From positions 6,510,001 to 6,574,000 of the forward strand of contig CATNEN010000007.1 of the NCBI GenBank assembly GCA_950097015.1: DNA of 64,000 bases. The letters run 5' to 3'. A program made the translations under genes and the position numbers. This DNA comes from Macrostomum hystrix. Its lineage: Eukaryota; Animalia; Platyhelminthes. Below are positions 18,125-46,000 of this stretch, piece after piece. The first letter of the stretch is position 1, and each line of letters begins with the position of its first letter. Below the pieces are notes generated by a model that made no database searches, was not told where the DNA came from, and worked only from the letters and a program-made list of their open reading frames with translations.

Positions 18125-21100
18125 CTGCAAAGCGGGACACGTGGTATCCTTTGTTCGATTGGGTGTTTGAGAAACAAAGGTTTAAAAAATCTCTAGTTGA
18201 GATGAGAGAGCTCAAACCAAAGAGACCAGAGGAAAAGTCGAGCGAAGCGACAGCGCGGACTTTGAGCTGCTTGATTGAATACAGCATACCTGGGCCTAAC
18301 ATTTGAGTAGGGTTATGTTTTCAGGTTTGCACTTTTACAGGTAAATTGCACCTGTTCTCTACCTGTACACTCTGACTGGGGTGCTATTCGAACCGTTCCC
18401 GATTACGCAAGGACAGTCAGCTCGAGCCAATTCGGTACGTATTTTACTTAATCTGGATGAGATCTATATGGAAAGGTTGGTTTCAGACCGATTGAGTGTT
18501 TTGTTCATGTGCTGTGGGGTTGTAAACCCGGAAAACATGATTTTCGTCATTTTTCGTCATTTTTCGATCTACAAATGTCCAAAAAATAAGAATCCACGAT
18601 ATGCTGATGACAGGAAACTGCATAGCTAAGATGCACAACAAATATGCGCACAATATGTACATCTCGATTTGTCTTAATATGTCACTGTTATTTGCTGTGG
18701 TTCGAAAAACACAAATTACGGCACTCTGAGGGACATGAATTCGAATAAACATATCGTCGTACAACTTTTTTCTCCTGCATCGCACAAATATGAGCTTGGT
18801 GTCGCTGAACTACATTTTAGATGAACTTTCATTTGACGCTAGAGAAAAGTACATATGTGCACTTTGTATTCGTACAGTATTCAAATTTGTGCATGTACAG
18901 GTGTACATGTACTTGTACACGATAGTACAAAAATAAGAAAGTCGCTCTAAAATTGCAGAAAACTGCTCAGACTCGTAGAACTAGGTGTGTAGACAAAAGT
19001 TTATATTGAAAATTAAGCTCTGCGTGGAACTATTGTTGATCCAAATGAGGTCAAAGGTGGAAAACGTTGTTTTTGCAGTTTTTTGCACTTTTTCGACATG
19101 AAAAATTTTACGCTCGAAAAACATATTACTATTTAGCCCAATTTAACCTATTTGCCCCCAATGACAACATATTTTGGCTAATTATGTACACCTCAGTTAA
19201 GCCGTGAAAATTCGTTTTTCCTGTACAGGTCAGATCACCTGTGATCACGACACACGGGTGGCTTCACAATTTAAGGTACTCCTTTTAGTGTAACTTTTGA
19301 ACACTTTATTTTAAGACATTGAGTGAGGCGTCGTTTAGTAACACTTTAATGCGGCAATAAAATGACGCATAACACTTGTGTCATCTCATAACAGGTAAGC
19401 GTCAATACCCGATTGTATACCTGTACAGGTAAAAATTTGCGGCAAATTTGGTCTGGAATTGAGGCAAACGCATTAATTTAGCTGAAAACGGTGTCAAATA
19501 ATATGTGTAGGTGTTGTATAAGAAGTGGCACTTCAGGTTTTTCAAAAGATGTCATTGTAACTTTTAAAATCGGTCTCAAATAAAAATATCGTGTTTTCGG
19601 GTCCATTTTTTGCTGTTTTTGTCGTTAGGCCAAAAAGTGAATTTTGCATCGCTATAAGACGCTTAGTACCTCGGAGTAAACGTTGTGCGCCTCGAAATTC
19701 TACATCGAATGTATGTATCGTGTGTTCTGGGAAAATTCGAAATAGTTGAAAAATAGGAATAAAGGTGCAAATTAGTGCATTTTTATAAGTCTGTGTAATT
19801 TGAAATATGTAAAAGCGTTGGTATAACAAAAGTTTATGTCTAGCATTGAAAACGTAGTAACGTAGTACGCTTTGGCATATATACAGCGCAAAAAAATATT
19901 TTCTAAACGTTTTTCATTGAATTTCAGGTTATTCGAGTTGTTTCATTATGGATAATTAAATTTTCGCTTTTCTTCGTTGTATTAATTTAAAATTTTGGCG
20001 TATGCGATTTAGTTTATCACAAATTCTAACGTATATACTATGTTGTAGGGCTCTTTTATTAAAATCTCACAGCCGTCACTAGTTATCGAAAAGCCCTTCT
20101 CTCTATTTTTATTCTTTATAAATTACTTATATTTATCCACTGCAAAATGCTTATTAAATGTCAACTTTCGTTATGTTTAAAATCTCCCAATTTATAGGGA
20201 AGTATAACACTTTAATATATATTCAATTACTGCGGTAGCAAATCATAAGTGCCCGAGCGGTAAGACACTTTTACTTTTAACTGTATAGAATTACTCTTTT
20301 AATAATTATTAATCACACCCAGTCTTTAAGGCTCCAATGGATTGGAGGGTACCAGACACACACAACGTATTTATTTCTATCCAAAACTGGCCTTTTGCTA
20401 TCGTCTCAATAATAAACTGTCCTCCAATACGTTTTATATATTCCCAACGTTATTTCCTCTTTTATAGCAAATTTTATTCAAAGAACACGTGCATTCAGCA
20501 TATTTTATTCTTGAACTTGGGTTATGCTCCCGAAAGTTAGTTTTTCTCCTTACAGCGCGCGTGTATTTATAGCAAGAAATTGGGGGTGAGTGTGCATATT
20601 TAAACAAAATTAAAGCGTAGTTAAACAACGGTGAATTTCTACAATTTCCTAGAATTAAGCGAAGTTACGGTAAAATACAAGCTACGCAAAATATAGCCTC
20701 TTACAACTAATTTTGCAATCAAAGTATTTTGTGCGCAATTCCCTGCGTCACATAAGAAGGCATTTCGACTTTAAGTTTGTAGCTACGATGAGTTTAATTA
20801 TGCTGTTTACATTGCTATATTACTATCTGATATACAGAAGGATACTGATAGAACAGTGTTGTATCTCTTTAAGTTGGTTTCAATCTGCACAAGAAAGTGA
20901 GTAGCAGTAAGTTTTCATGTGCTTGTAAAGTATCCATAATTTATCAAACCATCCCAAATTTAAAATTTTATGTAAAAATGAAAACAGTATGCTTATAAAT
21001 GGTGAATGGGCAATATAAATAACTGTAAATAAATAAAACAACTATAACTAAATTATATGACTATATTTTATGATATAAAATTATAAATGAAAGCAATAAT

Positions 21101-21991
21101 AAAAGCATAATTTCCATATAAATAATTATGAATAAGAAATATATAGTGAAATATAATGATAAGGCAAAATAATAACGATATATATAAGCGCAAAGCGGGG
21201 TCAAGGGGGCGCTCAGCCCCCTTGTGGGGGTGTGGGGGCAAAGCCCCCACATAACGATAAGGCAAAATAATAACAATATGCTTATAATGGTCAATGGGCA
21301 ATATAAATAACTGTAAATAAATATAACAACTTAAACGAAATTTTATGACTATATTTTATAATATAAAATTATAAATGAAAGCAATAATAAAAATAAATGT
21401 TAGGCATATTTATCCTAATTATTTTAATAATTATAATCATTTCCATTTTTGCTTAAATCGTTCAACCTGTAAGGTGTATGAACAGCAAAATAACATTTTG
21501 ATGTAGTGGCTATCGACAGTTTTGAACAATGTCCGACGCTTTGAGTTTGGTTCACAGCAGGAATACCCACACTTTCTATTCAAAATTTAACCCCTTCGCT
21601 TTTGACCAGTTTTTTATTTTGTGTAATACTGCCTGTGAACAAATATGGGTTTGCCAATAATGATTAGGCTGTAAATATTCAGCTGAATTCTAAGGCACAA
21701 TAGTTCACTGCAAAGTCGTATCTGATGGTTTCACGTACCTGTGGGTGTTCGACTGTTCATTGAATAAATAGTAGGCTTCTCAAAAGTCTCATTTTCAATG
21801 GCAGCAAACAAAATCGGAGCGGCAAAGTATTTGTTTTGTTTTGCACTGCTTCATATCGTTCTCCCTAAATTTCTCAATTGCTTGACTGTCTCCAGTACTC
21901 GTACGAGTAATTTAAAAAGTGATTTCTTGTTTTTTTATTTGCTCGAAAGTGTTCTATTCGTTTGATTAAGTACGAGTTTTGTTTTGTGTAG

Positions 21992-23012
21992 TATCAATGT
22001 AACCGTTAACCGCCGCGGTGGCGGCGTCCAAGGTGGCGGCCGAGGCGGCGGTGGCGGCGTCCACGGTGGTGGCGGCGGCGGTGGCGGCGTCCGCGATGGT
22101 GGTGGCGGCTACGGCGGCCGAGGCGGCGGTGGCGGCGTCCACGCTGGTGGCGGCGGCGGTGGCAGCGTCCGCGGCGGTGGTGGCGGCTTCGGCGGTGGCG
22201 GCGGCGGTAGCGGCTATGGCGGTGGCGGCGGCGGTGGCGGTTACGGCGGTGGCGGTCAAGGCGGCGGTGGCGGCTACGGCGGTGGCGTCTACGGCGGTGG
22301 CGGCTATGGCGGTGGCGTCTACGGCGGTGGCGGCGACGGCGGCAGTGGCGGCCTAGCGCCTTTCGGTGGCGGCTACGGCGGCAGTGGCGGCTACGGCGGC
22401 GGTGACGGCCGAGGTGACGGCCGAGGCGGCGGTGACGGCCGAAGCGGTGGCGGCCGAGGCGGTGGCGGCTACGGCAGCGGTGGCGGCGGCGGCGGCGGTG
22501 GTGGCGGTGACCGAGGCGGTGGTGTGCGCGGTGGCGGCCGTGTTTGTGGAGGTGCCAGCGCTGGCCGTTTATGTTAGTTTTCCATTTAGTTATCATTTGA
22601 ATAGAGCATTTTTTCATAGAGTGCATGAGTTTCTTTCTATTTACTTTGGTTTTTTTATTTGCAGTATGCCATCGATGTTGCGGTCTCGGGCATGTTGCCC
22701 GAGACTGCAAAAAGAGAAGCCGCAGCCGCAGCCGCAGCGGCGCCCGCTGTGAAAACAGCAGCCGCCGCCATAAAAGCAGCAGTAGCAACAGCAGCAGCAG
22801 CAGTAGCAACAGCAAAAGCAGTAGCAGCAGCAGCAGCAAAAGCAGCAGTCGCGTAAGTTTCTGCGTTCGAACAGAATTATATATTTTGTATTTAAAAAGG
22901 CAATAAATTTTCATATTACAAATGTAAGGTAATCCTCTTCAGCAGGAGCAGCCCCAGCAGCAGCAGGAGCAGCCCCAGCAGCAGCAGCAAGAGCAGCCAC
23001 AGCATCAGATAA
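21992..23012 (+). CDS. Cargo gene fragment in element A: Gly/RGG-rich exon (~21992-22572), CCHC zinc knuckle + RS/Ser-rich exon (~22665-22852), short Ser-rich terminal exon (~22943-23012)
   Basis: GGYGG/RGG repeats. A phase-1 intron (GTTAGT..TTGCAG) joins them to CHRCCGLGHVARDCKKRSRSRSRS. A GTAAGT donor follows at ~22853. Confidence 0.55.
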
Positions 23013-23066
23013 GGCCAAAGCAGCCCTGCGTCATGCAGTAGGGGCAAAATTGAAATTGTTTAACAG

Positions 23067-23340
23067 AATAAGGGAATAGCTGATGGGGAATAAGGTAGTA
23101 GCTGATTGGGAATAAGGTAGTAGCTGATTGGGAATAAGGTAGTAGCTGATTGGGAATAAGGTAGTAGCTGATTGGGAATAATGTAGTAGCTGATTGGGAA
23201 TAAGGGAGTAGCTGATTGGGAATAAGGGAATAGCTGATTGGGAATAAGGGAATAGCTGATTGGGTTTAAGGGAATAGCTGATAGGGAATTTGGGAATAAG
23301 GGAATTGCTGATGGGGAATTTGGGAATAAGGGAATTACTG
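23067..23340. repeat. 22-bp tandem repeat (GGGAATAAGGTAGTAGCTGATT) inside element A
   Basis: About 12 directly visible, partly degenerate units. Confidence 0.9.
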
Positions 23341-24724
23341 TGGATATTATTTTGGCGCAGGCCTGTGTTTGGCAATCCATGTGCCTCTGGATTAAAAAAT
23401 GAGGTAATAATTTTGCCAACAGTATACTCTGTGCAGTTTATGCAAATGCAGACTGTGGGTATGCAGTTGTCTAAATTTACCGTTAAGCATCAACCAACAG
23501 CATGTGGATTCTTATAGTTTGCATTTTCCCTTAATCTACTTTCAATTTATGAGTCATTAGCTGTGCTGTTAATGGCTTATTTAAACTTTTCAGGCAAGAA
23601 ATTTTGCGCAAAATACTCTGCTCTCTCATCTCAATGAAGATCACATCTTCATTACTAGCCTAGTTAGGTCGAAGTGCAGTCCGGAAAAATTGCCAACGAG
23701 GAGCGAAGCGAGCGTAGCTCCTCGTTGGCAATTTTTTCGGACAAACGAGACCGAGATAAGATGTCCCGGAGACTCCCCCAACGTAAAATCAACGTTTTGG
23801 AAAATAAAATTGATGCAGAATTAAAACCACTTGAGATGAAACCATGTGTGACCCCTCTATGGACGTAAAACATTTAGGGCTACAAGATGTGTGACGTGAA
23901 AGTTCCATAGCAACGCGTCTTGGTTGCCATGGCAACAAAAAAGTGACTTTTTTAGACCCGTCCAAATCTTGAATCTCAAAAAATAAGGATTCACAATATG
24001 GAGTCAAAAATTGATTGAACCCAACTTTTGGCGAATTTTCAGACCTACAAGACACTGATTGGTTATTTTCCGCTAAATGCTTACCTTGATAGGTAATTCT
24101 GTAAAAGTGTGTTTTTTAAGTGTCAAAAAATGCGCATTTTTTTCAACTTTCAACTTCCTTTGAGCTGCGTCATTCTAACGATGGCACCTGGGACTCTTAC
24201 ATGACGCACGACTTTAACCAAGATACTCACTTTAAGTGTACATTCGCACCTGTTAATTACATTAGAATATTCGACGGTAGGTATTCGAACCGAAATAAAG
24301 GAAATTCAACCTTGTTGCGAGACTCTAAAAAGTACATGAATGCGGTCATTTAGGTAAGATCTACATGTTTATAATACATTTTGAGCCGTTTCGTTGCACT
24401 GACTCTGAGCCATACACTGCTAAAGTCGATAAACGTGATTTAGGCTATTTTTATGCATTTTTCATGATACAAATGTACAAAAAATAAGAAACGACGACAT
24501 GCTAGGAAAATCAGACTTTTTAGGCAAGGTGCACAACTAAATTGCGCACAATATGTATATCTTGAAATTTCGTCTTAGTTTATTGAAGTCGCTGCCGGTA
24601 CAGAAATGTACTTTAACGACGGTACGGGGGGCTTGCATATCGAACATACTTTTTAGCCTGTAACTTTTGAGCGGATTACCGGAGCGCGACGCACTTGGTG
24701 TCATTGAACTACATTTTAGATGTA

Positions 24725-25790
24725 CTTTAATTTGAATGTATGTTCGCTGTCATTGCACGATGCGTTGTACACCTCAGGTCAGGTCACGTGACTTTCTGGA
24801 AATGAAATAATGAATTTGTACCTATACTAAGGATAGGTGAAGCGTAAGAATGAGCCAAAATTTGTACTTATTAGAAACACCTAGATGACTACTATCAGAA
24901 AAAATGATATTCACGTCTGTCAGTTGCAAAATTTTGTTATAATTGACTTATATCGAAAAATCGAAAAACGTGATTTTGTGCAAAAACAACCCATATGAGC
25001 ACACATAGGGTGAAAAATTTATTGATTTTCGCTATGAGGTTCTTAGCTTCCAAGAGCACTATTGTGCCCAGTAAACACGTACAGATGACTGCTATCTTCG
25101 TTAGTGTGCGAAAATTCGTATTTTTACGCTAATAACATTTACCGAATTACGAGGTTCCGGTGTTATGCGTGTTTTTGCTATATTTCACGCTACCATTTAT
25201 TAACGATGCTACGCCAGGCCTTCAGTGTGGTGTCAATAATTAGCATTTAAAAAGTGCTTTAATTTGAGTGTATGTTCGCTGGCATTGCACGATGCGTTGT
25301 ACACCTCAGGCCAGGTCACGTGACTTGCTGGAAATGAAATAATGACTTGTACCTATACTAGGGATAGGTGAAGCATAAGAATGACCCATATTAGTACTTA
25401 TTAGAAACATCTAGATGACTACTCTCAGAAAAAGTGACATTCACGTCTGTCAGTAGCAAAAAAATTTTTTAATTGACTCTTAAAATCGAAAAACGTGATT
25501 TTGTGCAAAAACAACCCATTTGAGCACTACATAGGGTGGAAAATATATTAATTTTCGCTATGAGGTTCTTAGCTTCCAAGAGCACTATTGTGCCCAGTAA
25601 ACACGTACAGATTGCTGCTATCTTCGTTAGTGTGCGAAAATTCGTATTTTGACGCTATTAACATTTTACCGAATTACGAGGTTCCGGTACTATGCGTTTT
25701 TTTGCTTTATTTCACGCTGCCATTTATTAACGATGCTACGCCAGGCCTTCAGTGTGGTGTCAATAAATAGCATTTAGCAAGTGCTTTAAG
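24725..25790. repeat. ~533-bp internal tandem duplication in element B (single copy in C)
   Basis: TTTAATTTGA(A/G)TGTATGTTCGCTG at 24725 and 25258 is followed by colinear sequence. Only one copy is present in C (~31740-32270). Confidence 0.85.
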
Positions 25791-26060
25791 ATGACATCAT
25801 GCGCATTGCGTTGCGTAAAAGTGTGGGTCCACAGTTCTGTAATAAGTTAAAATGACCTGATTTCGCAAAAATCTTTAAAAGAAAAAATACCAAGTAGGTA
25901 ACTAAAAAGCCTTCTGACACTGAATAAAAAATGCACAGAAAAGTGCTATTTTGTAACGTAAAAAGTCTTGCGTCCTGCAAAATTTTCTATGGTGACTTTT
26001 TGGAGCCTTTAAGTGTACAAACGTGCGCATTTTTAAAGCTGTTGAACTTACTTTTTGAGT

Positions 26061-27136: not shown

Positions 27137-27166
<30 letters not shown>
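26061..27166 (+). mobile_element. 5'-truncated RTE-like non-LTR retrotransposon (RT C-terminal half, ORF 26079-27098) with (TTG)n tail
   Basis: RT motifs GVLQGDTLAPFLF and LAYADDLAL. 3' (TTG)n tail. Absent from the homologous site in element C (~32540), with TGAGT duplicated at the flanks. Confidence 0.9.
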
Positions 27167-27169
<3 letters not shown>

Positions 27170-29351: not shown

Positions 29352-29515
29352 GGGGTGACACCTTTGCAGAAGACTACAGCAGCGGTGGCGGTGATCGCGG
29401 AGGCGGTGGTGGCTTCGGCCGTGGAGGTGTCTTTGGCCACGGCGGTGGCAGAGGCCGCGGTGGTGGCTTTGGAGGAGGCTTCGGCGGAGGTGGAATCGGC
29501 CGCAGCGGCAATTGA
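29352..29515 (+). pseudogene. RGG/Gly-rich exon-like fragment in element B
   Basis: GGGDRGGGGGFGRGGVFGHGGGRGRGGGFGGGFGGGG, a GC-rich island in AT-rich DNA. Confidence 0.45.
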
Positions 29516-37600: not shown

Positions 37601-39287
37601 TGTGTTGAATGCCGATCAACACAAGGTTCATCAACCTCTGGAAGGTTCCAGGTGCATTTGACAAGCCTTGAGCCATTACTTGGTACTCAAACTGGCCCCT
37701 AGTTAATGTCGAGAATGCCGTCATATGTTTGTGTTCTTCTTTAATTGGGACTTGCCAGTATCCAGAGTTAAGGTCTAAACTGCTGAAATACTGACTTCCA
37801 GTAAGGTGAGAGAATGTCTCCTGAATATTAGGTAACGGATACGGATAGTACTCCACACGAGAATTCAGTACTCGAAAGTCACTCACGATCCTTATTGTAC
37901 CATCCTTCTTTGGTACTATGACCAAGGGTGTCGAATAGGTGCTATAACATGGCCTAATCAGGTTTTTGGCCAGCATGTCATCAAGCAAATCATCCACCTG
38001 TTTTTGCAAATGAGGCAGAATTCTGCGAGTCGGTATTCTGACTGGCGTAGTATCTTTAATAGCAATTTCATGCGTCACCAAATGTGTCAGACCCATATCT
38101 TGCTCGGTCTGAGAGAACGCTGCTCTGTTCTCTTTCAGCAATTGTATAACTTGTTCCTTTTGTTCCGAATTCATCTCTCCGATGTTAACCTCCTTGATCC
38201 ATTCATCAATGTCCTTTGAGGCTTCCTCTCTCTTTACAGCATTGACTTGTCCGGTATTTTGACTCGAATTGATTGAATTAACAAAATAATTCAAGTTCTT
38301 CGCTGTTAATGGCTTGGCATAGCCAATAAGAGCTGCTCCTTTCACTTTGACTTCTCTGTTCTGTTTATTGACTAGTTCTATGACTCCAACTCCTTCGTTC
38401 AAGGTTACTAATGCTGGTACTAGCTCCAGATCATAACCTTTGGCTGCAATATAGCCGTCATTAGTCTCAATCACCATGCGAGTACCGTAATTAGCTTCGG
38501 CATTTTCTCCCAATCGGATTGGCACTTTCAAAGCACTATTCGCTGGTATCGTGATCTGATTCTGGCAATAGACTCGTCGAATTCGAACAGGTAGTCTTGT
38601 GAACTGAATTGGGATGCAGATCCCATCTTTCAGTACCAAGACTCCTTTACTGAAATTGATACCATCACAGTAGTCTGTGAGAAAGTCCATTCCAAGGATG
38701 TCGTCACAGTCGTGGTCACACAGAAGAAATCTTGTCTCAATCTCAATTTCTCCGAACTTCACTTTAAGCATTGCTTCACCTCTAAGTGACACAACTGATC
38801 CGTCAAACGTGGTGACTCTCAAATTGCATGGTTCTATCTCGTCGTCACAAACCACTCTCTTCCATGAACTCCTACTTAAAAAGTTGTTTCCGGCTCCTGT
38901 GTCTATCAAAAACATAATATCTCGCTTTCGTATCTTTCCATTCACAATTGCTTCCTGACCTTTCTTGACCGGCTCTGGAATTCTGATCGTCTCAATGGGT
39001 GACTCACTTTTAATTTCTTTGCTAGCGGCTTTCTGACTTGTTTCACATGGTGTAACTGGTGCTTTCGCATGTGCTTGCATTTTTGCAGTGCTGGGTGCAT
39101 ACGCATGGTGCTGTCTCATTTCTCGCGGCTGATTAAACTTGTTGAAATAATAATTATTTTTCTTGTAAGCAAAACGTTGGTTATCAATTTTATACGCACT
39201 ATTTACAAACTCTGAGGCCTGGAATTTGTTAAAGGATTTTCCGGAGGAACGGGGCCTCGACTTACGTCCCTCGTATTTTAGTTTCCC
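34677..39287 (-). CDS. pol: Gypsy Pol (PR-RT-RNaseH-IN), entered by -1 frameshift; ATG-defined ORF 39119-34677
   Basis: Motifs LIDTGA, YIDD, TDAS..RTDH, HHCC (LHDSPLAGH..CIPC) and integrase core (IDLIGP, TDNG, SNGLVER). The -1 frame is open from the gag stop through to 39119. Confidence 0.95.
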   Translation of the reverse strand, partial: GKLKYEGRKSRPRSSGKSFNKFQASEFVNSAYKIDNQRFAYKKNNYYFNKFNQPREMRQHHAYAPSTAKMQAHAKAPVTPCETSQKAASKEIKSESPIETIRIPEPVKKGQEAIVNGKIRKRDIMFLIDTGAGNNFLSRSSWKRVVCDDEIEPCNLRVTTFDGSVVSLRGEAMLKVKFGEIEIETRFLLCDHDCDDILGMDFLTDYCDGINFSKGVLVLKDGICIPIQFTRLPVRIRRVYCQNQITIPANSALKVPIRLGENAEANYGTRMVIETNDGYIAAKGYDLELVPALVTLNEGVGVIELVNKQNREVKVKGAALIGYAKPLTAKNLNYFVNSINSSQNTGQVNAVKREEASKDIDEWIKEVNIGEMNSEQKEQVIQLLKENRAAFSQTEQDMGLTHLVTHEIAIKDTTPVRIPTRRILPHLQKQVDDLLDDMLAKNLIRPCYSTYSTPLVIVPKKDGTIRIVSDFRVLNSRVEYYPYPLPNIQETFSHLTGSQYFSSLDLNSGYWQVPIKEEHKHMTAFSTLTRGQFEYQVMAQGLSNAPGTFQRLMNLVLIGIQHKFAMSYIDDIVTYSKEFDEHLCHLREVFRRLSEAGLKLRPRKCNLFQEELKYLGHIVGRNGIRTDPAKIEAIRSWPTPQDVKELRSFLGLCNYYCRFVKDYAEAAHPLFQLTKKGITNFKEKWNSKHDEAFALLKQKMMSTDVLAYPEFSEYVKMVLDTDASEGRIGACLGQIQADGVERPIAYFSRAMTESEKRYPITRKELLALVDGMKHFRFYLIGKKFLARTDHKAILWLLRQTEAQGILGRWLERLSEFQYEIQHRSGAKHSNADSLSRRPSEIKEASEAKINQSQITGRAMMSQSCQTDSGIDTDDDDANEIFVDARDYFEDEELEETTACRKLLTDFLSVPLTKEQLVIAQREDQDVKILIEWKEQGILRPELPTGASHELKKMIKSYEQMKIEDGMLTIVNDGTRKVVLPSGIEKEVLRELHDSPLAGHLGRDKTVQKVRERFWKPGLVTTVENYVAECIPCLESKAGNKVKAPVQTFPVCEAFHRLHIDLIGPISKESRRGHKYVLTVIDSTTKFPFAFPIRNQKSDTVIKLLQERIFSEYGQCRWIHTDNGKTFVSRQFQAFCTLYGIKHTCTTPYHAQSNGLVERFNCQIKSIITCLVEKDHSDWDLLIPAALVAVRTSVNQTTGFTPHYLLFGREAELPIDSVVKRPRLYYDYPSYVADHAKRIEEMQKVVQKKLEKVRDRREQAAETVITKAVPIGGLVLINNPQLHGDESHKFHRKKRASYRVLAKLSDTVFRVQKEEDGKLIGAMMLVHRNNLTPVPNSVKATDMTISSDVEKREQTDKGRQETAQKTKKRREAQPRMVKRPIQEIEQEESSDSEEERIQWRARKGTDISGSEVEETDGGPDTESGSSAEELMEDSEMEMEEELEESEEDSEEEPEAEPSGHNAVEEPAREEEAEDRADAASEAAAPLQWQEVRYNLRPRKCPVINEPVGPTPVTNHREAPRKPNKYGFVPRKRYSHYQ
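39214..39287 (-). promoter_or_regulatory. -1 ribosomal frameshift signal: G GGA AAC slippery heptamer + predicted H-type pseudoknot
   Basis: The heptamer (39287-39281) directly precedes the gag TAA. After an 8-nt spacer come stem1 GAGGGACG/CGUUCCUC and stem2 GAGGCC/GGCCUC. Confidence 0.8.
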
Positions 39288-40186
39288 TGGTTCTGGAAGT
39301 TCTGCTGACCGTTGCCCATCCTCATAGGACAGAATCTGGCAATATGGCCGAGTTTTCCGCAGTTGAAGCAGGTTCGGTTCTGGTTCAAGAATTGCGGCCC
39401 ATTGTACTGCGTATTCGGCTGTTGCAGGAACTTAGGTACATATGGCTTCCTTGGTCCGTACTGTTTCTCAGCCATTTTGCTGGTGAGCTCCTGCAAGAGT
39501 TTCTGCTGTCTTTCAATTTCTTCCTTCTGCTGCACAATTGTTGCCCTTAGAGACTCCTCTTCCTCTTCACCATTTCTGGTAATCCTTACTCCGGCACCTT
39601 TGTGTGTCATGCTCCAGGCGGCTTCCAACCTTCTAAGCATTCTCTTTAGTTCCTGTAGATTGGCAGGCTGAGCAAAGATTAGTTTCTCCCTCATGTCAGC
39701 GGATATCTTGGCTCCCTTGATGTATTGCTCAACCAGTTCATCTTCTCGTTGCTCCATTGTCATGTTTGGGAAGGCTCTGGCAGCCAGTTCAATCAGACTA
39801 TCTGAATAGGCTTCTACCGACTCATTCTTGCCTTGCATTCTTCCTCGAAACTCTTCTCTGAATTCTGCTGGGCTTCCAGTTCGTCCGAATCTTTCTGCTA
39901 TCCGCTCCTTGAATTCTTCGTAGTCAAGGTTTTCTGGGAGGTTCATTCTCTGTACAGAGGCAAATGCTGTGGACAAGTCCAAGTTGGCAAGCGATTCCTG
40001 CTTTCGATGGTCCACATCAATTCCTTCTGTCTCGCATCTTTGATCAAATGCGGTGAGCCACACCTGAATATCCTGATTAGGTGTGAACTTTTGGATCTGC
40101 ACATGGCGTGTTGGAGCAATCTCCAACCGATTTCTCAGCTCTTCCGCGAGTACAGCCATCAAATCTTGTGCTTGAGCTTGATCCAT
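39278..40186 (-). CDS. gag: Gypsy Gag
   Basis: 302-aa ORF with a retrotransposon capsid motif (QGKNESVEAY) and CCHC knuckle CFNCGKLGHIARFC. Confidence 0.93.
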   Translation of the reverse strand: MDQAQAQDLMAVLAEELRNRLEIAPTRHVQIQKFTPNQDIQVWLTAFDQRCETEGIDVDHRKQESLANLDLSTAFASVQRMNLPENLDYEEFKERIAERFGRTGSPAEFREEFRGRMQGKNESVEAYSDSLIELAARAFPNMTMEQREDELVEQYIKGAKISADMREKLIFAQPANLQELKRMLRRLEAAWSMTHKGAGVRITRNGEEEEESLRATIVQQKEEIERQQKLLQELTSKMAEKQYGPRKPYVPKFLQQPNTQYNGPQFLNQNRTCFNCGKLGHIARFCPMRMGNGQQNFQNQGN

Positions 40187-40246
40187 TGTTACTCCTCAAT
40201 GGGGTTATTTCGCTGTTTCTCTGATCCTTTCCGCTGCCACCAAAGT

Positions 40247-40509
40247 TGTAACAGGGCTTGTCTCTCTACTTTTCTCTCTAATGGTAGCGTATCACTCGGC
40301 GCGAGCGGTTTAACCTTCTAAGGCACTGGCCACACTGGCACGTTGATTTGTCTCAACTGAATTACACTCGTTTATATACACAAAAGAAAATGTTTGTTAA
40401 AGTAAACGAATTTGACAAAATTTTACATATAAAAATTATTTAGCGCATTCAAACAAAAGCATAGACACGAATTTGACTTTAAAGAAATAATAAAAGCATC
40501 CCTACTACA
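40247..40509 (-). repeat. 5' LTR (263 bp; ~109 bp shorter than the 3' LTR)
   Basis: Same termini as the 3' LTR, with a gap after AGGCACTGGC. Confidence 0.92.
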
Positions 40510-41736
40510 AAAATAACAAATATAAAATACGAAAATAAATCGACAAGGAAAAAACGAGCACTATTTTTAATCCACACAAGGCATGCTGTCCACAAAGAAT
40601 GACTACTATTTTGAAATTTAAAAGTACACAAAAAACCTTAACAAAATAAAGATTCGTCCCATTTACAACTGCAATAAGGCGGAAAGCCTTTTTGTTTACG
40701 AGTTGGAGTGGTAGCGAAGTTTGTGTGCTGCATTGCACGTATATTTATATACAATGCAAGAGCGAGATAGAGGGGTCTAGGGAGGTGCGAACTGGTGGCA
40801 TGACTTCATACCCCGGCTTAGCGAGCCGGCTGGCTGGGTGCACCAACCCCCACCTCAACTAGACTGAGGTTGAGGGGTTTTGGGTGCGGCTGCACTGGCG
40901 CTGGCTGGTCGCGTGTTGACTCTCCACCACAGCAAAGTATTATTCTTTTAGTTTCGATGACAAAAAGAAATTCTTGTAGTGAAAAGTTCCAAGGCAAGGA
41001 TGAAATGCAAAGATTCATTTCTACACATTGCCATCATTTCAAAGAAATAAGCATATTGGCAGGAGTAAGTCATGAAATAAAATCAAAATGGAAGCAATAA
41101 CCAAAGCACAGGCACAAACTTTGTCACTTCTGAGATGCTAATTAACCCTGATCACAGATTGACATTCAAATAAAAACTGTTGATTTCGTTATTTAATAAC
41201 AATATTGGCAAATTAAAAGCTGAAAATTGAGCAAATGTTCTATCGATCAGGCACAAGGTTCGATTAAAATCAATCAATGCAGCCATATCAAATTGAACTA
41301 AGAAGACTAAAAAACTAAAAAGACAGGGGGAAGCTAAAAACATTAAATAAATCATAAAAACAACATTGGACAGCACAAAGGACATAAGATCTAATTGATT
41401 TTAGCTGGGGAAGCGATACCAAGCAAGGGGCACCTTAATTTTTTGTAAAATGACACAAACAGTAGCAACCAACATTAATAGTGCGCTAGGTCCCACACAA
41501 CTAGTTTCCAAGCAGTTCAATTAGACCCTGACTGGCCAGCGGCCATGGCTAGACCGGTCCACAATGTGCCTATTGTAACTGATGGTGACACGCAGGCCGC
41601 CAGTGTTGGCCTCGCCGAGGCACACCAACTGACAGGGCAATTCCTCGTCGCTTTCCTCATCGACTCTGATAACAGACAGACAGACCCGCTGCCGCTGCTG
41701 CTTATAATCAGACTGATAATAGTTAGCGTTTTCATC

Positions 41737-42153
41737 TCAGCCCCGAGAAGACTGAATAGTAGTGTAGCGCGGTTTATAGCAACTGTGAAGCTTCTCCTGC
41801 TGGAGTGCATGCTGGCCAAAGCTCTGCGATCGAAAAGTGCCACCACCTTGACTAGCGCCTTGGTTGGACTTGGCGCCGCCTGTTCTCTGTCGCTGGATAA
41901 GCGAGCAGATGTGGCTTGTCTCCTCTGTTTCTCGACCAAATGCGACTAACTCGCCATTCACTAGGTGGATGTAGCCTACATTAGGCAAGCTGCACATTAG
42001 TGAAGTCACATTTTCATGTCCAGCCAGATCAAGGGCGTGCCCGGCCAGGGCCCTGTACTGGGCCTGCAGCTCGCATAGTCGGACACCATTCTTAGTGCTG
42101 AGAAGTACAGCCCGAAGCAGGCTGTCTTGAGCAGTGGGGCTGGGAGTCGACAT
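41737..42153 (-). CDS. Stand-alone extended LOTUS (OST-HTH) domain ORF, TDRD5/TDRD7-like N-terminus, cargo of element C
   Basis: MSTPSPTAQDSLLRAVLLSTKNGVRLCELQAQYRALAG..SLMCSLPNV..ETSHICSLIQRQR resembles, from memory, the TDRD7/TDRD5 eLOTUS domain including its C-terminal extension helix. A splice acceptor TTTTCAG lies just upstream of the ATG. Confidence 0.75.
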   Translation of the reverse strand: MSTPSPTAQDSLLRAVLLSTKNGVRLCELQAQYRALAGHALDLAGHENVTSLMCSLPNVGYIHLVNGELVAFGRETEETSHICSLIQRQRTGGAKSNQGASQGGGTFRSQSFGQHALQQEKLHSCYKPRYTTIQSSRG

Positions 42154-42897
42154 GAATAAACAGCTGAAAATCAATATATAAGGATTAGAGCAAAGAGGCT
42201 AGCTAAGGAAAATGCTGTATACTTCATAAATATATAAATATTTGTAGAAATTGATTTATTAGGCCTAGTCTAAGTGCTAATTAGACAATAAAAACAATTG
42301 AAGTATGCAGCTAAATATTTTGAAAAGCCTACTCCTAACATTTACCAAACTAGTGTTTAGCATTAAGAAAGTATATTTGCCTGTTTAAATTGCACTTTTT
42401 GTTGTTGTGATTTGGAATCACATTAACAACAATTATAACACAGCTGTTTTTAATAACAAAATGAATAATAAATAATACACAAATAAAGAAAAAAAATTTT
42501 AACAATCCATTTTAGATTTAATTTAAGACTACAAATGATTATAATGTTAAAGTTAGAAGCATTATATTTCTATAGGGCCTATGTTTTGTTTTTATAACAA
42601 TAATATAGACAATATGATATTTAAGCCTAACTATCTTTGTTTGTTCCTTTTTAAACAGCTATAACAGTGTAATATGACAATATAATATGGTGCCTAGAAA
42701 ATGTAGTGTCCTAGTTGTGCCACTATCAGTAGGCCTAGGCCTATTTGATATCATTTGATGAGATGCCTAAGCAACAAGATAAGCAAAGGCAAATTAGCAG
42801 TTTTGTTATTGACAAAGTTAATAACTAGCTGTACAGGTGGATAGTAGCATGGCCAATATAGCATTGGGGCCTAGTCAGTAAAATTAGTAAAATTTTA

Positions 42898-43062
42898 CAC
42901 CACTTCACACCTCTTCAGATGCAATGCCAGGCCTACGGAGCTCACGTTAGAAAACCTCTGGACTGATCCTGTTAAGGCCGCCACCTTCCTGAGACTACCG
43001 ACGAGCGAGGTAGAGTGTGAGCGTCCCGAACTAGCCTAAAGGAAGGCTACAACATACAACAC
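42898..43062 (+). mobile_element. Short 3'-end fragment of a non-LTR retrotransposon
   Basis: Encodes TTSHLFRCNARPTELTLENLWTDPVKAATFLRLP..*, a LINE ORF2 C-terminus-like motif (H-L-F-x-C..LW..P...A.FL), followed by a CAA-rich tail. Confidence 0.55.
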
Positions 43063-46000
43063 ATTGCTAATCCGGGCTGCATCTCGCTGCTTTTATATAT
43101 TTTTTGTTAATTAAAAGTAAAGTACTTATCTTCGTTCCTCGAACCCAGTTTCTGTTTAAGGCAGTGTTTTCACAGTGTACTCTTTGAGCACTCTTAAGTA
43201 CTCGTACTCTGGTACTCTTTAAGGGCGTAGCAATAGAGTACTCTGGTATTCATTTAAAGTGCGTACTTTGAAGTGGGCGAGTACTTTTTAAAGTGCAACG
43301 CATTTCAGTCTGTCATCATCAATCCTAATTTTGTACTATATGAAAGTGTCAATAATCGCTGGTACATTAGTACATTCTCGCAACGTAAAATTAGTAGATT
43401 TATTATATGCATTATAATTATGCATTATATGCAAGATACCTTGCTTAGGAAATAACAGATATGTTATCAGTCCCATTAATTATACCGTACGTACTGAAGT
43501 AACACAACATAATATATATGGTAACGTGGCTTGATGGCACTGCTAATGTGTGTGTCTGCCCATTCGTGTTGTTGCATGTACAAAACAAGTGCTGTTTGGA
43601 TAAATCTTTCCTTTAATTATGTTTTACGCTTTTTGACAGATGGGCATAGATAGACAGGTAGATAGATCTCATACTGTCTCTCTCACTCTCCGATTCTCCG
43701 CGCTCCCTCCCGCTGTTTTAATTTTGTTTATTTTGTTCCCTAATAAAAACAAAAATTCACCCTCTCCCTCCATATGTGGGTCCCACATTCGGCTGTCAGT
43801 CAGTCAAGGAGATATTAGCGCTCATCAAGATTTTGATACAGGAGTCAATGATGCAGTAGTCTGCTCTATTAAAGTGCTTCAGTGAGTATCCTCAGTACAA
43901 AGGCCGCTAAGTTTTGGAATATTTATTAAGTTTTTTGTTCAATTTAATGGGTGACATGATCAGAAGTAAAAAATAATTTCGAAATATTGAGCAATTAATG
44001 CACTTCGACCTGCTAAGGTGGCACACCTTCAATCTAGTTGTCCTTGGTATGTGCATGTGTGCAATAACATCTCTATACTACCACTATTGTTAATGAACTT
44101 TGTTTTTCATTATTATGTAATAACGGCCAGATTAGGAATTTGTTCTCAATATAGGATGATATAGTGTGTTGCCATGTAGACAACATTCAAGCATTCAAGC
44201 ATCGCTGAGATCACGGTTGACAAGGAAAGGTTAAATTGTTCCAAGCAGATTGCTGCTTAACACAAGCAAATCATATTGAATGTTTTATATTTCCTGCATC
44301 GGACATGAGCAGTTCACTTCATCTTATACATCCTGTCTATTTGATGTGCTCATGGACCTCTTACCGTCTAACTTAAAATAATTTTTCTACGAGTATAAAT
44401 TAATTACATCTTTCGATAGCATTAGAAATTCGATGACAATAATAACTTTAATAAAACCTTGCTATATTGTATTGATGTTAAGTCAGTTTGTGACCTCAAA
44501 AGAGCGCAATATGCACAATAACAAAACTTTTCTGCATCACATAACTTATATAGCAGTAGAAATAAATTCGCAGTGCACCAAAATGTTTCAAACCCAGTTT
44601 GCATTTCCGTAGAACAATTAGTGCAATCTAGTACAATATGCTGCATTAGTTGCCATTTTGGCTCAACGATATCGCTTGCATGCATATACCACCAATCGTA
44701 GAACTTTGAACTACGATACGGAGAAAATTCCATTTCCATTGCAATATAGTTGCGGCGGTGATGAACGAAACTGCAATAGCCTTTGCTGTGATGGCCTGAG
44801 CCTTTAAGATCAATTCAATTGATAATAGGAGGTGCAGATAGTGGTCTGTGCGCCAGCCAAATGAATCTAAGATGGCGAATGCCATGAAGAACATCATGAC
44901 TTGCACGCATTGACGAAAGCATGCAGCTTTTTAGCAAAGTTCTTGACGTTTAAGCTCAAAGCCTACACCGAATATGTTTAAATGGTGTCAGTTTAAATGC
45001 TATTGTAAAACAAGGCTTGGGTCATTAAATGTACTTTTCACCAAACTGGCGACAATATTCGGATGCAGTCAGCAGGCGAGCTCTGATTTTCCCTGTCAAC
45101 AGCTCCAGTTCGGCCAGCAGCAATTTATTTGGCGGAATCGACATGCAACTCCTGCATGTTGAACTGGAGCGAACCTTGAAGCCTGTATAAGACAGGTAGG
45201 TAAACAATGCGGGACAATATGCCACCCACCCCAGCCTAGCGCCAAGTGAATTATAGTGTTAAGAGTACAACGCAATGGGAACTGGATGCGCTTCGGTATG
45301 GGAACCAGCGCGCACAATTATGTACAGTCATGCCGCCCCAAGCTACTGTACTAGCTGCTGCTGCTGCTGCTGCTGTTGTGCGCATGTTTATACGTCAACC
45401 CCTCGCAACCAAATTGCACCAGCCAGCGAGTTACTCAGTGCAGTGCAATAAATAATCAATTTTTTAGGAGAAATTGCCAGGAAAATAAGTAGCGACTGCT
45501 CGGGGTGGGTCCGTGCGTTATCAAATTTCAAAATTCAGAATGGGCCTAAATTAATGAACCAAGCAAGGCCAAGCTTGGTTTGGTGAAACCGAAATGAATC
45601 AAGTGTTGAATGAATCAGTATTGAATAGGAGCAACTATTGTTACTACGCAGTAGGCCATTAAACTTGGCTTACAACTGCCCAGCATTCATACTCGGATAA
45701 TTAAGTTGCTGGCCAGAAAGTATCTGGTGTTGGGGCATGGTGGCTTTCTGGAGAGTGCAAGAGGGGATTTTTTCACCAATTTAGCATTACCAGCCCCGTC
45801 CTCAACCCTCCGGCTGTCGCTTTGTTGGCGTATTGATCTGGTTCTGCTAGTCCTTTCTCTCCCTCCGTTCTCTCTCTCTCCCTTCTCTGGAGGCCGTGTA
45901 CTGAAGCCGGCGGCGGAGGTGGGGCGGGCCGGGCGGGTGAGGAGGCTTTGCGGGTTCGGCTTGAATTAACGCCGGGCTGGGAGGAGTGATTATGAAAACG

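What the first reader, a model, noticed from the sequence alone, without database searches (positions are those of the whole stretch)
18197..44037. Stack of Helentron-like elements whose cargo is RNA-binding / germ-granule-type modules (RGG, CCHC, RS, eLOTUS)
Seen: three tandem non-autonomous elements with IR/hairpin/CTAG termini and no transposase. A carries spliced RGG-CCHC-RS exons, B an RGG fragment, and C an eLOTUS ORF. Known: eLOTUS domains (Oskar, TDRD5/7) bind Vasa-type DEAD-box helicases, RGG + CCHC tracts occur in Vasa/GLH/CNBP-type proteins, and Helitrons capture gene fragments. Inference: this lineage may preferentially carry germ-granule/piRNA-pathway modules, possibly as decoys or modulators of transposon silencing, rather than random host DNA.
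Basis: partly seen in the sequence, partly recalled or inferred. Interest (0 to 1): 0.82.

Follow-up and report, generated by a model that had tools for sequence, protein, structure and literature searches.

The report
Helitron train carrying a captured LOTUS gene
Three rolling-circle jumping genes sit exactly end to start at one site in a flatworm genome, and one of them has picked up and multiplied a small germline-type (LOTUS) gene, but nothing shows that such genes are picked up on purpose.

Summary
The structure is real. A scanner for the terminal signature finds exactly three elements in the 64-kb window: A 18197-23663, B 23664-31310, C 31311-44037. Each runs 5'-TT...CTAG-3' with 13-15-nt subterminal inverted repeats and a 3' hairpin. 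Both families are dispersed, and 14 of 15 independent 5' flanks end in CTAG. A shares its last 532 nt (96.6%) with a Rep/Hel element. "No transposase" holds only for Rep/Hel: C holds an uninterrupted Ty3/Gypsy gag and pol, and B a LINE RT fragment. Cargo: the C subfamily carries a complete 208-aa eLOTUS gene, 43% identical over 94% of its length to a Macrostomum lignano protein. It is intact in 5 of 8 aligned copies and broken in the window copy. A carries three exon-like G-rich/CCHC-RS/Q-rich pieces with no detectable parent gene. B's "RGG" is low-complexity sequence with no match in canonical B copies. The LOTUS ORF shows no significant constraint (omega about 0.7, p=0.08), and canonical B copies carry only satellites. 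Preferential capture and decoy function are therefore unsupported. Earlier notes of this scan describe Helitron trains elsewhere in this genome.

The parts
18193..18196 (+). Host CTAG immediately 5' of element A. It is the target motif and is also present in the paralogous copy at 2402-2405.
18197..23663 (+). Element A, 5467 bp, non-autonomous Helitron2/Helentron-like. 5' subTIR 18197-18211, 3' subTIR 23620-23634, hairpin 23635-23651, tail ending CTAG 23652-23663.
   Evidence: The last 532 nt are 96.6% identical to the 3' end of a Rep/Hel element.
21984..22566 (+). A cargo, exon-like piece 1: Gly-rich (GGY/RGG) open frame with no in-frame ATG. GT donor at 22567.
   Evidence: ORFs are open in several frames because of (GGN)n-type repeats.
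22665..22852 (+). A cargo, exon-like piece 2: one CCHC knuckle (C-X2-C-X4-H-X4-C), four RS dipeptides and a Ser-rich tail. AG acceptor at 22663-22664, GTAAGT donor at 22853.
22943..23041 (+). A cargo, exon-like piece 3: Gln-rich, ends in TAG.
   Evidence: Present only in the window and C11 copies.
23664..31310 (+). Element B, 7647 bp. 5' subTIR 23664-23678, 62-nt 5' palindrome 23679-23742, 3' subTIR 31272-31284, hairpin 31288-31302, tail CAATCTAG 31303-31310.
24696..25789 (+). About 530-bp tandem repeat units inside B (also in C at 31710-32272): satellite-like central repeats.
26078..27157 (+). Nested 5'-truncated non-LTR retrotransposon fragment (RT ORF 26079-27098, (TTG)n tail). Skipped by the three contiguous canonical B copies.
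29100..30245 (+). B-specific extra (29100-29865), including the G-rich 'RGG' stretch at about 29380-29560, and the 48-bp minisatellite 29703-30245.
31311..44037 (+). Element C, 12727 bp, same family as B but the LOTUS-bearing subfamily. The 5' palindrome is largely deleted in this copy. 3' subTIR, hairpin and CTAG at 43999-44037.
34107..40509 (-). Nested Ty3/Gypsy LTR retrotransposon. LTRs 34107-34479 and 40247-40509 (about 97% identical), gag with CCHC 39278-40186, pol (PR-RT-RNaseH-IN) 34677-39119, AAAA on both flanks.
40510..42574 (-). Captured host segment (continues at 34035-34106 on the other side of the Gypsy). It is homologous at 85-92% to a non-element locus at C37:4282104-4283689. 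A SINE/MITE-like insert of about 260 bp lies at 40672-40931.
41737..42153 (-). eLOTUS ORF, the window copy: 138 codons plus a TGA that is CGA in the other copies. The family ORF is 208 aa and continues to about 41521.
2406..5254 (+). Segment at the paralogous position of the train in the other copy of the segmental duplication. It starts TC and ends CTAG, but its first 905 nt and last 555 nt are single-copy, so it is not shown to be a transposon.

Best explanation
Window 18197-44037 is a head-to-tail train of three non-autonomous rolling-circle (Helitron-superfamily) elements. They have Helitron2/Helentron-like architecture and lie in a Macrostomum-like flatworm genome. All three sit at one CTAG|T site between a duplicated dynein first exon and a Dscam-like gene copy.

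Shown:
- Each element is 5'-TT...CTAG-3' with subterminal inverted repeats and a 3' hairpin.
- The two families are dispersed.
- Elements land after a host CTAG and before a T.

Inferred: the Rep nuclease recognises the same CTAG|T at the donor ends and at the target. Every insertion therefore recreates target sites at its ends, and trains grow.

B and C are separate insertions of two subfamilies, later hit by a LINE and a Gypsy element.

Cargo is ordinary Helitron gene capture.
- The C subfamily took up a roughly 2.1-kb host block holding a whole small eLOTUS gene (208 aa, a full-length relative and probable orthologue of M. lignano BOX15_Mlig017850g3) with about 0.4 kb upstream and 1 kb downstream. 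The probable source is a locus like C37:4.28 Mb. The subfamily then amplified it to at least 9 copies.
- Family A carries the 3' exons of a G-rich/CCHC/RS/Q-rich gene of unknown origin.

Since capture the cargo has drifted about neutrally. The window's LOTUS copy is dead.
For: Termini and train
- A de novo scan finds only A, B and C in the 64 kb, on both strands.

Dispersal
- At least 21 other places hold B's first 2.4 kb at 95-96% identity.
- Three places hold the canonical 5.8-kb form as contiguous pieces.
- The A family has about 6 copies.

Target
- 10 of 11 B-family and 4 of 4 A-family 5' flanks end in CTAG, while CTAG occurs at 0.0036 per position in the window.
- All independent 3' flanks begin with T.
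- The CTAG 5' of A is also in paralogue X, which lacks A.

Superfamily
- A's last 532 nt are 96.6% identical to the 3' end of an element encoding DUF6570, Helitron_like_N, PIF1 and Pif1_2B.
- The genome has 67 Helitron_like_N matches.

Independent insertion of B and C
- B is 96-98% identical to C3:9068004-9073791 and C's cargo segment is 95-96% identical to C38:21012954.
- B against C is only 81-86% identical in the middle part.

LOTUS gene
- PDB matches to Oskar, TDRD5 and TDRD7.
- Oskar A162 and L228 align with Ala15 and Ile82.
- One M. lignano protein of 218 aa matches at 43% identity over 94% of the query, including a shared C-terminal motif.
- The segment is present in at least 8 C-type copies.

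Donor-like locus
- C37:4282104-4283689 has no B/C flanks, lacks the SINE-like insert, and its left edge coincides within 5 bp with the B/C homology break.

Neutral drift.
Against: - No autonomous partner sharing B/C termini was identified.
- The 5' end of the A-like Rep/Hel element was not found within 2.6 kb upstream.
- CTAG on both sides of each element is formally also what a 4-bp CTAG target duplication would give.
- Only 3 of 15 upstream flanks show a perfect hairpin of 6 bp or more. Targeting is therefore to CTAG|T in general, not only to resident Helitron ends.
- The segment at the paralogous site (2406-5254) is single-copy, so the empty-site argument is not clean.
- The tests for selection have low power: 76 and 23 changes.
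- 5 of 8 ORFs are intact, and a second LOTUS paralogue fragment abuts another C-type copy. This leaves room for a non-random link.
Confidence: 0.73

Rival explanations
1. This Helitron lineage preferentially captures germ-granule/piRNA-pathway modules (eLOTUS, RGG, CCHC, RS), and these act as decoys or modulators of transposon silencing.
For: - The eLOTUS cargo is carried by the whole C subfamily, in at least 8 copies.
- Its Vasa-interface positions are compatible with binding.
- 5 of 8 aligned ORFs are intact.
- 6 of 14 OST-HTH matches in the genome are element-borne.
- A 3.07-kb piece of a different LOTUS paralogue starts exactly at the CTAG|TT end of another C-type copy.
- Family A carries G-rich, CCHC and RS exons in 6 copies.
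Against: - There are only two family-level cargo items.
- G-rich, S-rich and Q-rich tracts are triplet-repeat low complexity, open in several frames.
- B's RGG has no match in the canonical copies.
- Canonical B and other variants show no coding cargo.
- No significant constraint on the LOTUS ORF.
- The window copy and 2 others of 8 are broken.
- 3 of the 5 other A copies have lost the last exon-like parts.
- Unchecked earlier notes of this scan report unrelated cargo (ETS/Hes genes, a methyltransferase-like gene) in other transposons of this genome.
Confidence: 0.07
2. The small eLOTUS gene is a working host gene that now survives only as Helitron cargo. The ancestral locus died, one or more element-borne copies supply the function, and amplification changed its dosage.
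For: - The only close copies in the genome are the C-type cargo copies (88-100% protein identity to the window ORF) and the broken C37 locus. The next paralogue is 42% identical.
- The whole 208-aa architecture is conserved with an M. lignano protein.
- The captured block includes about 0.4 kb upstream, and an AG acceptor lies about a dozen nt before the ATG. That could serve spliced-leader trans-splicing, which is known in Macrostomum (recalled, not checked here).
Against: - Omega among copies is not significantly below 1.
- No expression data.
- The C37 locus may itself be an old copy rather than the ancestral gene.
- Gene loss is equally possible.
Confidence: 0.12
3. The elements are not rolling-circle elements but cut-and-paste transposons that duplicate a CTAG target.
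For: Every element is flanked by CTAG on both sides. 5' TT and G|T junctions depart from the canonical Helitron 5' TC and A|T (passages of PMC4067079).
Against: - The inverted repeat is terminal at the 5' end but 27-29 nt inside the 3' end, and is followed by a hairpin.
- A shares its 3' end with a Rep/Hel-encoding element.
- Junctions inside the train hold a single CTAG, not two.
- No DDE transposase is associated.
Confidence: 0.03
4. The train was made by local tandem duplication or unequal recombination rather than by successive targeted insertions.
For: B and C belong to one family and share 94-98% identity in their first 2.4 kb. An earlier, unchecked follow-up note in this genome attributes about half the copies of another train to unequal recombination.
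Against: - B and C differ by subfamily-level structure (cargo block, 81-86% identity in the middle).
- Each is closer to copies on other contigs than to its neighbour.
- A is an unrelated family.
Confidence: 0.05

Closest known systems
Helentron / HINE, Helitron2 and proto-Helentron elements (Thomas et al. 2014, PMC4067079; passages read)
   Same: - 13-15-nt subterminal inverted repeats.
- A palindrome near the 3' end and another near the 5' end.
- Central tandem repeats in the non-autonomous copies.
- 5' TT and 3' CTAG, as in proto-Helentron-Pi.
- A Rep/Hel partner without a visible endonuclease, as in Helitron2.
   Different: - The target here is CTAG|T (5' flank G), not T|T (Helentron) or A|T (proto-Helentron, Helitron).
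- No APE endonuclease was seen in the one related Rep/Hel element examined.
- A partner for the B/C family was not found.
- Target-site details of that paper are in additional files that I could not see.
Head-to-tail Helitrons in maize and bat (Du et al. 2008, PMC2267711; passages read)
   Same: Precise CTAG|T junction with no host base between two elements. Insertion next to a resident element's end was already discussed there.
   Different: Here the junction is CTAG|TT between Helitron2-like elements of two families, and solitary copies also sit after a host CTAG. The train therefore follows from the general target motif.
Helraiser read-through capture (Grabundzija et al. 2016, PMC4778049; abstract and passages read)
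   Same: The 3' hairpin acts as terminator, bypass transduces flanking host DNA, and the circle junction is CTAG joined to the 5' end.
   Different: The LOTUS block lies inside the element between family sequences, so simple 3' read-through does not explain it without a later recombination. The C2 locus (a LOTUS paralogue piece directly after a C-type 3' end) looks more like read-through.
eLOTUS domains of Oskar, TDRD5 and TDRD7 (Jeske et al. 2017, PMC5458760; passages read)
   Same: Winged-helix LOTUS sequence match with the C-terminal extension. A small residue stands at the Oskar A162 position and Ile at the L228 position.
   Different: A 208-aa stand-alone protein with a short conserved C-terminal motif and no Tudor or OSK domain, encoded inside a transposon. 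Binding to Vasa is untested.
Satellite-carrying Helentron non-autonomous elements of the Pacific oyster (PMC7492417; search listing and start of the abstract only)
   Same: Non-autonomous elements that carry tandem-repeat arrays.
   Different: A different phylum. I saw no mention of gene cargo in the part I read.

Membership tests
Helitron superfamily (rolling-circle) | An autonomous relative encodes Rep (HUH) plus a PIF1-type helicase and shares the termini | tested here: met
   For family A only. The last 532 nt are 96.6% identical to the 3' end of L052, which encodes DUF6570, Helitron_like_N, PIF1 and Pif1_2B with frameshifts. No partner was found for B/C.
Helitron superfamily (rolling-circle) | 3' end CTRR preceded by a short palindrome | tested here: met
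   CTAG ends, with hairpins 8-12 nt upstream, in A, B and C.
Helitron superfamily (rolling-circle) | No target-site duplication | tested here: inconclusive
   CTAG lies on both sides of each element. Paralogue X shows that the 5' CTAG pre-exists, but no clean empty site was available.
Canonical Helitron | 5' TC terminus and insertion between A and T | tested here: not met
   5' TT. The 5' flank ends in G of CTAG in 14 of 15 copies.
Helentron / HINE | Subterminal inverted repeats of about 12-15 bp plus a 3' stem-loop | tested here: met
   A: TTGAGATGAGAGAGC / GCTCTCTCATCTCAA. B and C: AGGTCGAAGTGCA / TGCACTTCGACCT.
Helentron / HINE | Insertion within a TT dinucleotide | tested here: not met
   Flanks are CTAG on the 5' side and T on the 3' side. 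The second 3' base is T or C in family A.
Helentron / HINE | The autonomous partner carries a C-terminal APE endonuclease | tested here: inconclusive
   In L052 the last helicase ORF overlaps the start of the A-like 3' region, which leaves no room for an APE domain, but that copy is degenerate.
Helitron2 | Asymmetric terminal inverted repeats, palindromes at both ends, Rep/Hel without endonuclease | tested here: met
   ATIRs, a 62-nt 5' palindrome in B and in 10 of 10 other copies, and L052 without a visible endonuclease. Rep phylogeny was not done.
eLOTUS domain (Oskar/TDRD5/TDRD7 type) | LOTUS (OST-HTH) domain | tested here: met
   PDB phmmer gives Oskar 2.5e-6, TDRD5 8.7e-5 and TDRD7 1.5e-4. 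Pfam gives 21.1 bits for the window copy (below the 23.8 cut-off), while other cargo copies score 24.1-25.7 bits, over the cut-off.
eLOTUS domain (Oskar/TDRD5/TDRD7 type) | C-terminal helix extension with interface residues (small residue at Oskar 162, Leu/Ile at 228) | tested here: met
   The alignment runs to the end of the Oskar construct. Ala15 and Ile82 stand at those positions.
eLOTUS domain (Oskar/TDRD5/TDRD7 type) | Binds and stimulates Vasa | not testable with these tools
   Needs a pull-down or ATPase assay.
zf-CCHC zinc knuckle | C-X2-C-X4-H-X4-C with the GH..ARDC-type signature | tested here: inconclusive
   The motif CHRCCGLGHVARDC is present. Pfam scores 17.9 bits against a cut-off of 20.8.
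RGG / RS low-complexity RNA-binding regions | Clustered RGG boxes, or a run of RS dipeptides, in a real expressed protein | tested here: inconclusive
   RGG/GGR motifs and 4 RS dipeptides are present. The DNA is a triplet-type repeat open in several frames, and no parent gene was found.

The most novel reading that the evidence does not exclude
The 208-aa eLOTUS protein carried by the C subfamily is made in germline or stem cells, for instance through spliced-leader trans-splicing at the acceptor just upstream of its ATG, and binds Vasa. A Helitron family would then spread a regulator of the nuage/piRNA machinery. That could blunt silencing to the element's benefit, or the host could now depend on element-borne copies because the non-element locus is dead. 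A second LOTUS paralogue piece attached to another copy's 3' end would then hint at repeated recruitment.
Probability: 0.08. Interest if true: 0.8.

Novelty: new member of a known kind. Interest (0 to 1): 0.4.

Why it matters
Helitron trains and Helitron gene capture are both known, and this scan has noted trains many times in this genome. Three things here add to that:

1. A clean case in which the same CTAG|T motif marks donor ends and target. This gives a simple reason why trains form.
2. The capture and roughly nine-fold amplification of a complete, species-conserved stand-alone eLOTUS gene. Known relatives of this domain recruit and stimulate Vasa in germ granules.
3. The only non-element copy of that gene is broken.

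My two searches found no paper that links Helitrons with LOTUS domains: 12 of 68 papers listed, none holding the word Helitron; Helentron, gene capture. If the cargo were expressed, it would be a testable link between a DNA transposon and the germline silencing machinery in an experimentally tractable flatworm genus. As the evidence stands, it is ordinary, neutrally drifting captured DNA.

Tried and rejected
- Parent gene for A's cargo. A protein search of the CCHC part against the own genome gave 16 matches: the 6 A-family copies plus 10 at 40-43% identity with E of 0.05 or more, 9 of them inside open frames of 492-2607 aa. No parent was found. The G-rich exon was not searched in the large protein databases, because a low-complexity query would return noise and the search is costly.
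- Spliced model.
- Segment 2406-5254 as a Helitron. It starts TC, ends CTAG and has a 3' palindrome, but its first 905 and last 555 nt match only themselves. The whole-segment search was swamped by a nested 310-bp repeat. I therefore dropped the claim that the same site was hit independently in both paralogues.
- Upstream flanks as Helitron ends. The idea that all upstream flanks are 3' ends of resident Helitrons fails: only 3 of 15 have a perfect hairpin of 6 bp or more, against 14 of 461 control CTAG sites (Fisher p=0.013).
- Helitron-like termini around the other LOTUS loci (C37, C3, C2, C24): none found in the 10-20 kb held.
- Other coding cargo in B/C and A copies and in 2406-5254: the only other open frames of 100 aa or more (80 aa in the two window segments) lie in flanks or low-complexity sequence, and none was run against Pfam.
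- ESM Atlas: it does not hold the sequence.
- Supplementary files of papers were not opened. The target-site figures of PMC4067079 are in additional files.
- Organism. It was not named by any tool. 'Macrostomum-like flatworm' comes from earlier unchecked notes. It agrees with the single hit of the large protein search being an M. lignano protein at 43% identity, which also suggests the species is not M. lignano itself.

Full report
**Setting.** The window is animal DNA. Earlier unchecked notes of this scan call the genome a Macrostomum-like flatworm. The only hit of the large protein search is a Macrostomum lignano protein. The assembly has 220 Mb in 42 contigs, and the window is C7:6510001-6574000.

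A self-comparison shows a tandem segmental duplication:
- 1778-2405 matches 17386-18197 at 97-99%. This is an exon-bearing piece on the minus strand.
- 5254-17366 matches 44033-58577 at about 90-97%. A first-reader note calls this a Dscam-like gene.

The finding's coordinates are exactly the stretch between these two blocks in the second copy. In the first copy the same position holds an unrelated 2.85-kb segment, 2406-5254.

**The observation.** The junctions read as follows:
- host ...AAAATCTCTAG | TTGAGATGAGAGAGC... (start of A)
- ...TTACTAGCCTAG | TTAGGTCGAAGTGCA... (A to B)
- ...CACCTTCAATCTAG | TTAGGTCGAAGTGCA... (B to C)
- ...CACCTTCAATCTAG | TTGTCCTTGG (C to host)

In A the first 15 nt recur as a reverse complement at 23620-23634. 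A hairpin follows (TGAAGAT-CAC-ATCTTCA), then a 12-nt tail ending CTAG. In B and C, AGGTCGAAGTGCA recurs as TGCACTTCGACCT, followed by the hairpin AAGGTG-GCA-CACCTT and the tail CAATCTAG.

I wrote a scanner for this signature: CTAG|T, then a 12-mer whose reverse complement (at most one mismatch) precedes a hairpin and a second CTAG|T. On both strands of the whole 64-kb window it returns only A (18197-23663), B (23664-31310), C (31311-44037) and the B+C combination. The structure is therefore real and specific.

None of the 67 Helitron_like_N matches in the genome falls in the window. 'No transposase' is thus right for Rep/Hel, but the stretch is not free of mobile-element genes:
- C contains a full-length Ty3/Gypsy element (34107-40509, minus strand). 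It has gag with its own CCHC knuckle and a 1480-aa protease-RT-RNaseH-integrase ORF, both without stops. Its LTRs are about 97% identical, and AAAA lies on both flanks.
- B contains a 5'-truncated non-LTR RT fragment with a (TTG)n tail.

**Dispersed families.**
- B's first 2.4 kb occurs at 95-96% identity in at least 21 other places.
- Three places hold a contiguous 5.8-kb canonical form. It skips the RT fragment and 29100-29865.
- The RT fragment matches 9 other loci over its whole length at 100%, so it comes from a young LINE.
- A is a mosaic family of about six copies.

B and C are separate subfamily members rather than a local duplicate. B is 96-98% identical to C3:9068004-9073791, and C's cargo segment is 95-96% identical to copies such as C38:21012954. 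B against C is 94-98% identical in the 5' part but only 81-86% in the middle.

**Target and train formation.**
- 10 of 11 B-family and 4 of 4 A-family independent 5' flanks end in CTAG on otherwise unrelated sequence. The exception ends in TTAG.
- All independent 3' flanks begin with T: TT in 6 of 6 for B/C, TT or TC for A.
- CTAG occurs at 0.0036 per position in the window.
- The CTAG before A is also present in paralogue X, which lacks A. It therefore belongs to the host.
- Only 3 of 15 upstream flanks contain a perfect hairpin of 6 bp or more, against 14 of 461 control CTAG sites (p=0.013). Most insertions are at plain CTAG|T sites and a minority at ends of resident Helitrons.

My inference is that the nuclease cuts the same CTAG|T at donor ends and at the target. 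Each insertion then leaves CTAG|T at both its ends, and trains follow.

Head-to-tail Helitrons with a G/T junction are described for maize, and for bats as cited there (PMC2267711, passages). The 3' hairpin as terminator, read-through transduction and CTAG-to-5' circle junctions are described for Helraiser (PMC4778049, abstract and passages).

**Which kind of Helitron.** A's last 532 nt are 96.6% identical to the 3' end of an element at C1:10694000-10702000. That element encodes DUF6570, Helitron_like_N, PIF1 and Pif1_2B in frameshifted ORFs. Its last helicase ORF overlaps the start of the shared 3' region, so there is no room for an endonuclease domain. Its 5' terminus was not found within 2.6 kb upstream.

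I compared the elements with the definitions quoted in PMC4067079:
- They have the subterminal inverted repeats and stem-loops of Helentrons/HINEs and Helitron2.
- They have the 5' TT and 3' CTAG of proto-Helentron.
- Their target (CTAG|T) matches none of those groups.
- 'Helentron-like' is fair for the ends. Helitron2-like is the closer label as far as tested.
- No partner for B/C was identified. Further Rep/Hel loci could not be fetched.

**Cargo of C.** The C-specific block is 34035-34106 plus 40510-42574, split by the Gypsy element. It is present in at least 8 other C-type copies at 95-96%. The ORF in 8 aligned copies:

| Copies | State |
|---|---|
| 4 | intact, 208 aa |
| 1 | intact, 206 aa |
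| Window copy | TGA at codon 139 where the other 7 have CGA, plus a 6-bp insertion |
| 1 | frameshift |
| 1 | two stops |

. By the protein search, 5 of 9 C-type copies have open frames of 221-223 aa.

- Domain. The ORF matches Oskar LOTUS (2.5e-6), TDRD5 (8.7e-5) and TDRD7 (1.5e-4) through the C-terminal extension.
- Interface residues. Ala and Ile stand at the positions of Oskar A162 and L228, the two interface residues tested by Jeske et al. (PMC5458760, passages).
- Relative in another species. The large protein search gave one hit, 'hypothetical protein BOX15_Mlig017850g3, partial [Macrostomum lignano]'. It is 218 aa and 43% identical over 94% of the query. It shares the LOTUS part and a C-terminal motif (LVRL..GG..LRVTISN..RWP). 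The cargo is therefore a complete small gene conserved between species, not a fragment of a Tudor protein.
- Relatives in the own genome. The only close relatives are the cargo copies and one locus without B/C flanks, C37:4282104-4283689. That locus is 85-92% identical and lacks the 260-bp SINE-like insert. It carries a roughly 146-bp deletion that breaks the frame. Its left edge lies within 5 bp of the point where B/C homology stops. I read it as the likely donor, or as a relic of it. Synteny could not be checked.
- More distant paralogues. The nearest is a 574-aa single-exon eLOTUS plus RGG gene at C37:4447314, 42% identical. Of 14 OST-HTH matches in the genome, 6 are cargo copies.

**Selection on the LOTUS cargo.** Differences of the 8 copies from their majority consensus are 24 synonymous and 52 non-synonymous, against a neutral site ratio of 1:3.16. 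That gives omega of about 0.7, one-sided p=0.083. Consensus against the C37 locus gives omega 0.82, and 0.57 in the LOTUS part from only 8 changes. There is no significant constraint, but the power is low.

**Cargo of A.** Three exon-like pieces follow one another with canonical signals:
- A Gly-rich frame up to 22566, with a GT donor.
- 22665-22852, CHRCCGLGHVARDC followed by KKRSRSRSRS and a Ser-rich tail, with a GTAAGT donor.
- 22943-23041, Gln-rich, ending in TAG.

Piece 1 joins piece 2 in frame (phase 1). There is no in-frame ATG, so this looks like the 3' part of a gene.

The cargo is shared by the six A-family copies. Three of the five others lack everything from about 22800 to 23441, and one has a tRNA-like SINE in the first 'intron'. 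The knuckle part has no other relative in the genome above 43% identity, so no parent gene was found. The Gly-, Ser- and Gln-rich parts are triplet-type repeats, open in several frames. They are therefore weak evidence for RGG or RS 'domains'.

**Cargo of B.** The G-rich stretch at about 29380-29560 lies in 29100-29865. The canonical copies skip this part, and it is only partly matched at a minisatellite locus on C39. It is not family cargo. The DNA search skips simple repeats, so the absence elsewhere is weak evidence. Apart from this, B and the other variants I could read hold tandem repeats (about 530-bp units, 99-bp units and a 48-bp minisatellite). The only other long open frames I saw in those copies lie in flanks or in low-complexity sequence, and I did not check them against Pfam.

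**Verdict.** The anatomy is confirmed, and the 'Helentron-like' label is broadly right. The inference of preferential germ-granule cargo acting as decoys is not supported. There are two family-level cargo items, one of them mostly low complexity, and there is neutral-looking drift with broken copies, including this one.

One observation keeps the idea alive at low odds. At C2:4775133, directly after the CTAG of another C-type copy, begins a 3.07-kb copy (89-92%) of the C3:15552081 locus. That locus carries a different LOTUS paralogue, and the homology starts exactly at a CTAG|TT in both places. It looks like 3' read-through, but I could not follow it further.

**Literature.** My two searches for Helitron with LOTUS, OST-HTH or Tudor, and for Helentron with gene capture, listed no paper linking the two.

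Noticed in passing
window 1778-17366 and 17386-58577; 2406-5254: A tandem segmental duplication covers a dynein-like first exon plus a Dscam-like gene. At the exact position of the train, the other copy holds an unrelated 2.85-kb segment. It starts TC and ends CTAG after a palindrome, yet its first 905 and last 555 nt are single-copy. It is unresolved whether this is a one-off Helitron-like unit or ancestral DNA.
   Followed up: partly
L043 5133-8198 (C2:4775133-4778198) and L039 4082-6757 (C3): Directly after the CTAG of a C-type copy starts a 3.07-kb copy (89-92%) of a locus downstream of a myosin VI gene. That locus carries another LOTUS ORF, 39% identical to the cargo. The homology begins exactly at CTAG|TT in both places, which suggests possible 3' read-through transduction.
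   Followed up: partly
window 26078-27157; nine other loci: The non-LTR RT fragment in B matches 9 other loci over its whole length at 100% identity, all truncated at about the same point. This points to a very young or active LINE family.
   Followed up: no
G000:C1:24629418-24677751: At least five B-family variant copies lie at about 10-kb spacing on one contig. They form a higher-order array of elements and carry a 665-bp repeat that is also present in A (window 20041-20705).
   Followed up: no
C38:19325762/19332186, C38:21972392/21978188, C8:3071806/3084505, C38:3041731/3054358: Rep/Hel-encoding elements with long open frames (1418-2100 aa) also occur as same-strand pairs 6-13 kb apart. Autonomous elements may therefore form trains too.
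   Followed up: no
L052 2368-2760 (C1:10696367-10696759, minus strand): An ORF with an ISXO2-like (IS1595-family) DDE transposase domain (Pfam 4.3e-20) lies just beyond the 3' end of the Rep/Hel element.
   Followed up: no
L038 7315-9039 (C37:4447314-4449038): A single-exon 574-aa gene with an N-terminal eLOTUS followed by an RG/RGG-rich region. It is the nearest intact paralogue (42%) of the cargo gene and lies about 165 kb from the broken non-element copy on the same contig.
   Followed up: partly
window 20975-21392: A GC-rich palindromic insert of about 160 bp (about 21180-21250) sits between two 130-bp direct repeats (20975-21104 and 21264-21392, 91.5% identical) inside element A.
   Followed up: no
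L017 (C3:160793-165112), within the first 'intron' of the A cargo: A tRNA-like SINE of about 380 bp is inserted in one A-family copy between the G-rich and CCHC pieces.
   Followed up: no
window 31311-31350 versus 23664-23745: The window's C copy has lost most of the 62-nt 5' palindrome that B and 10 of 10 other copies keep. The deletion lies between the two palindrome arms.
   Followed up: partly
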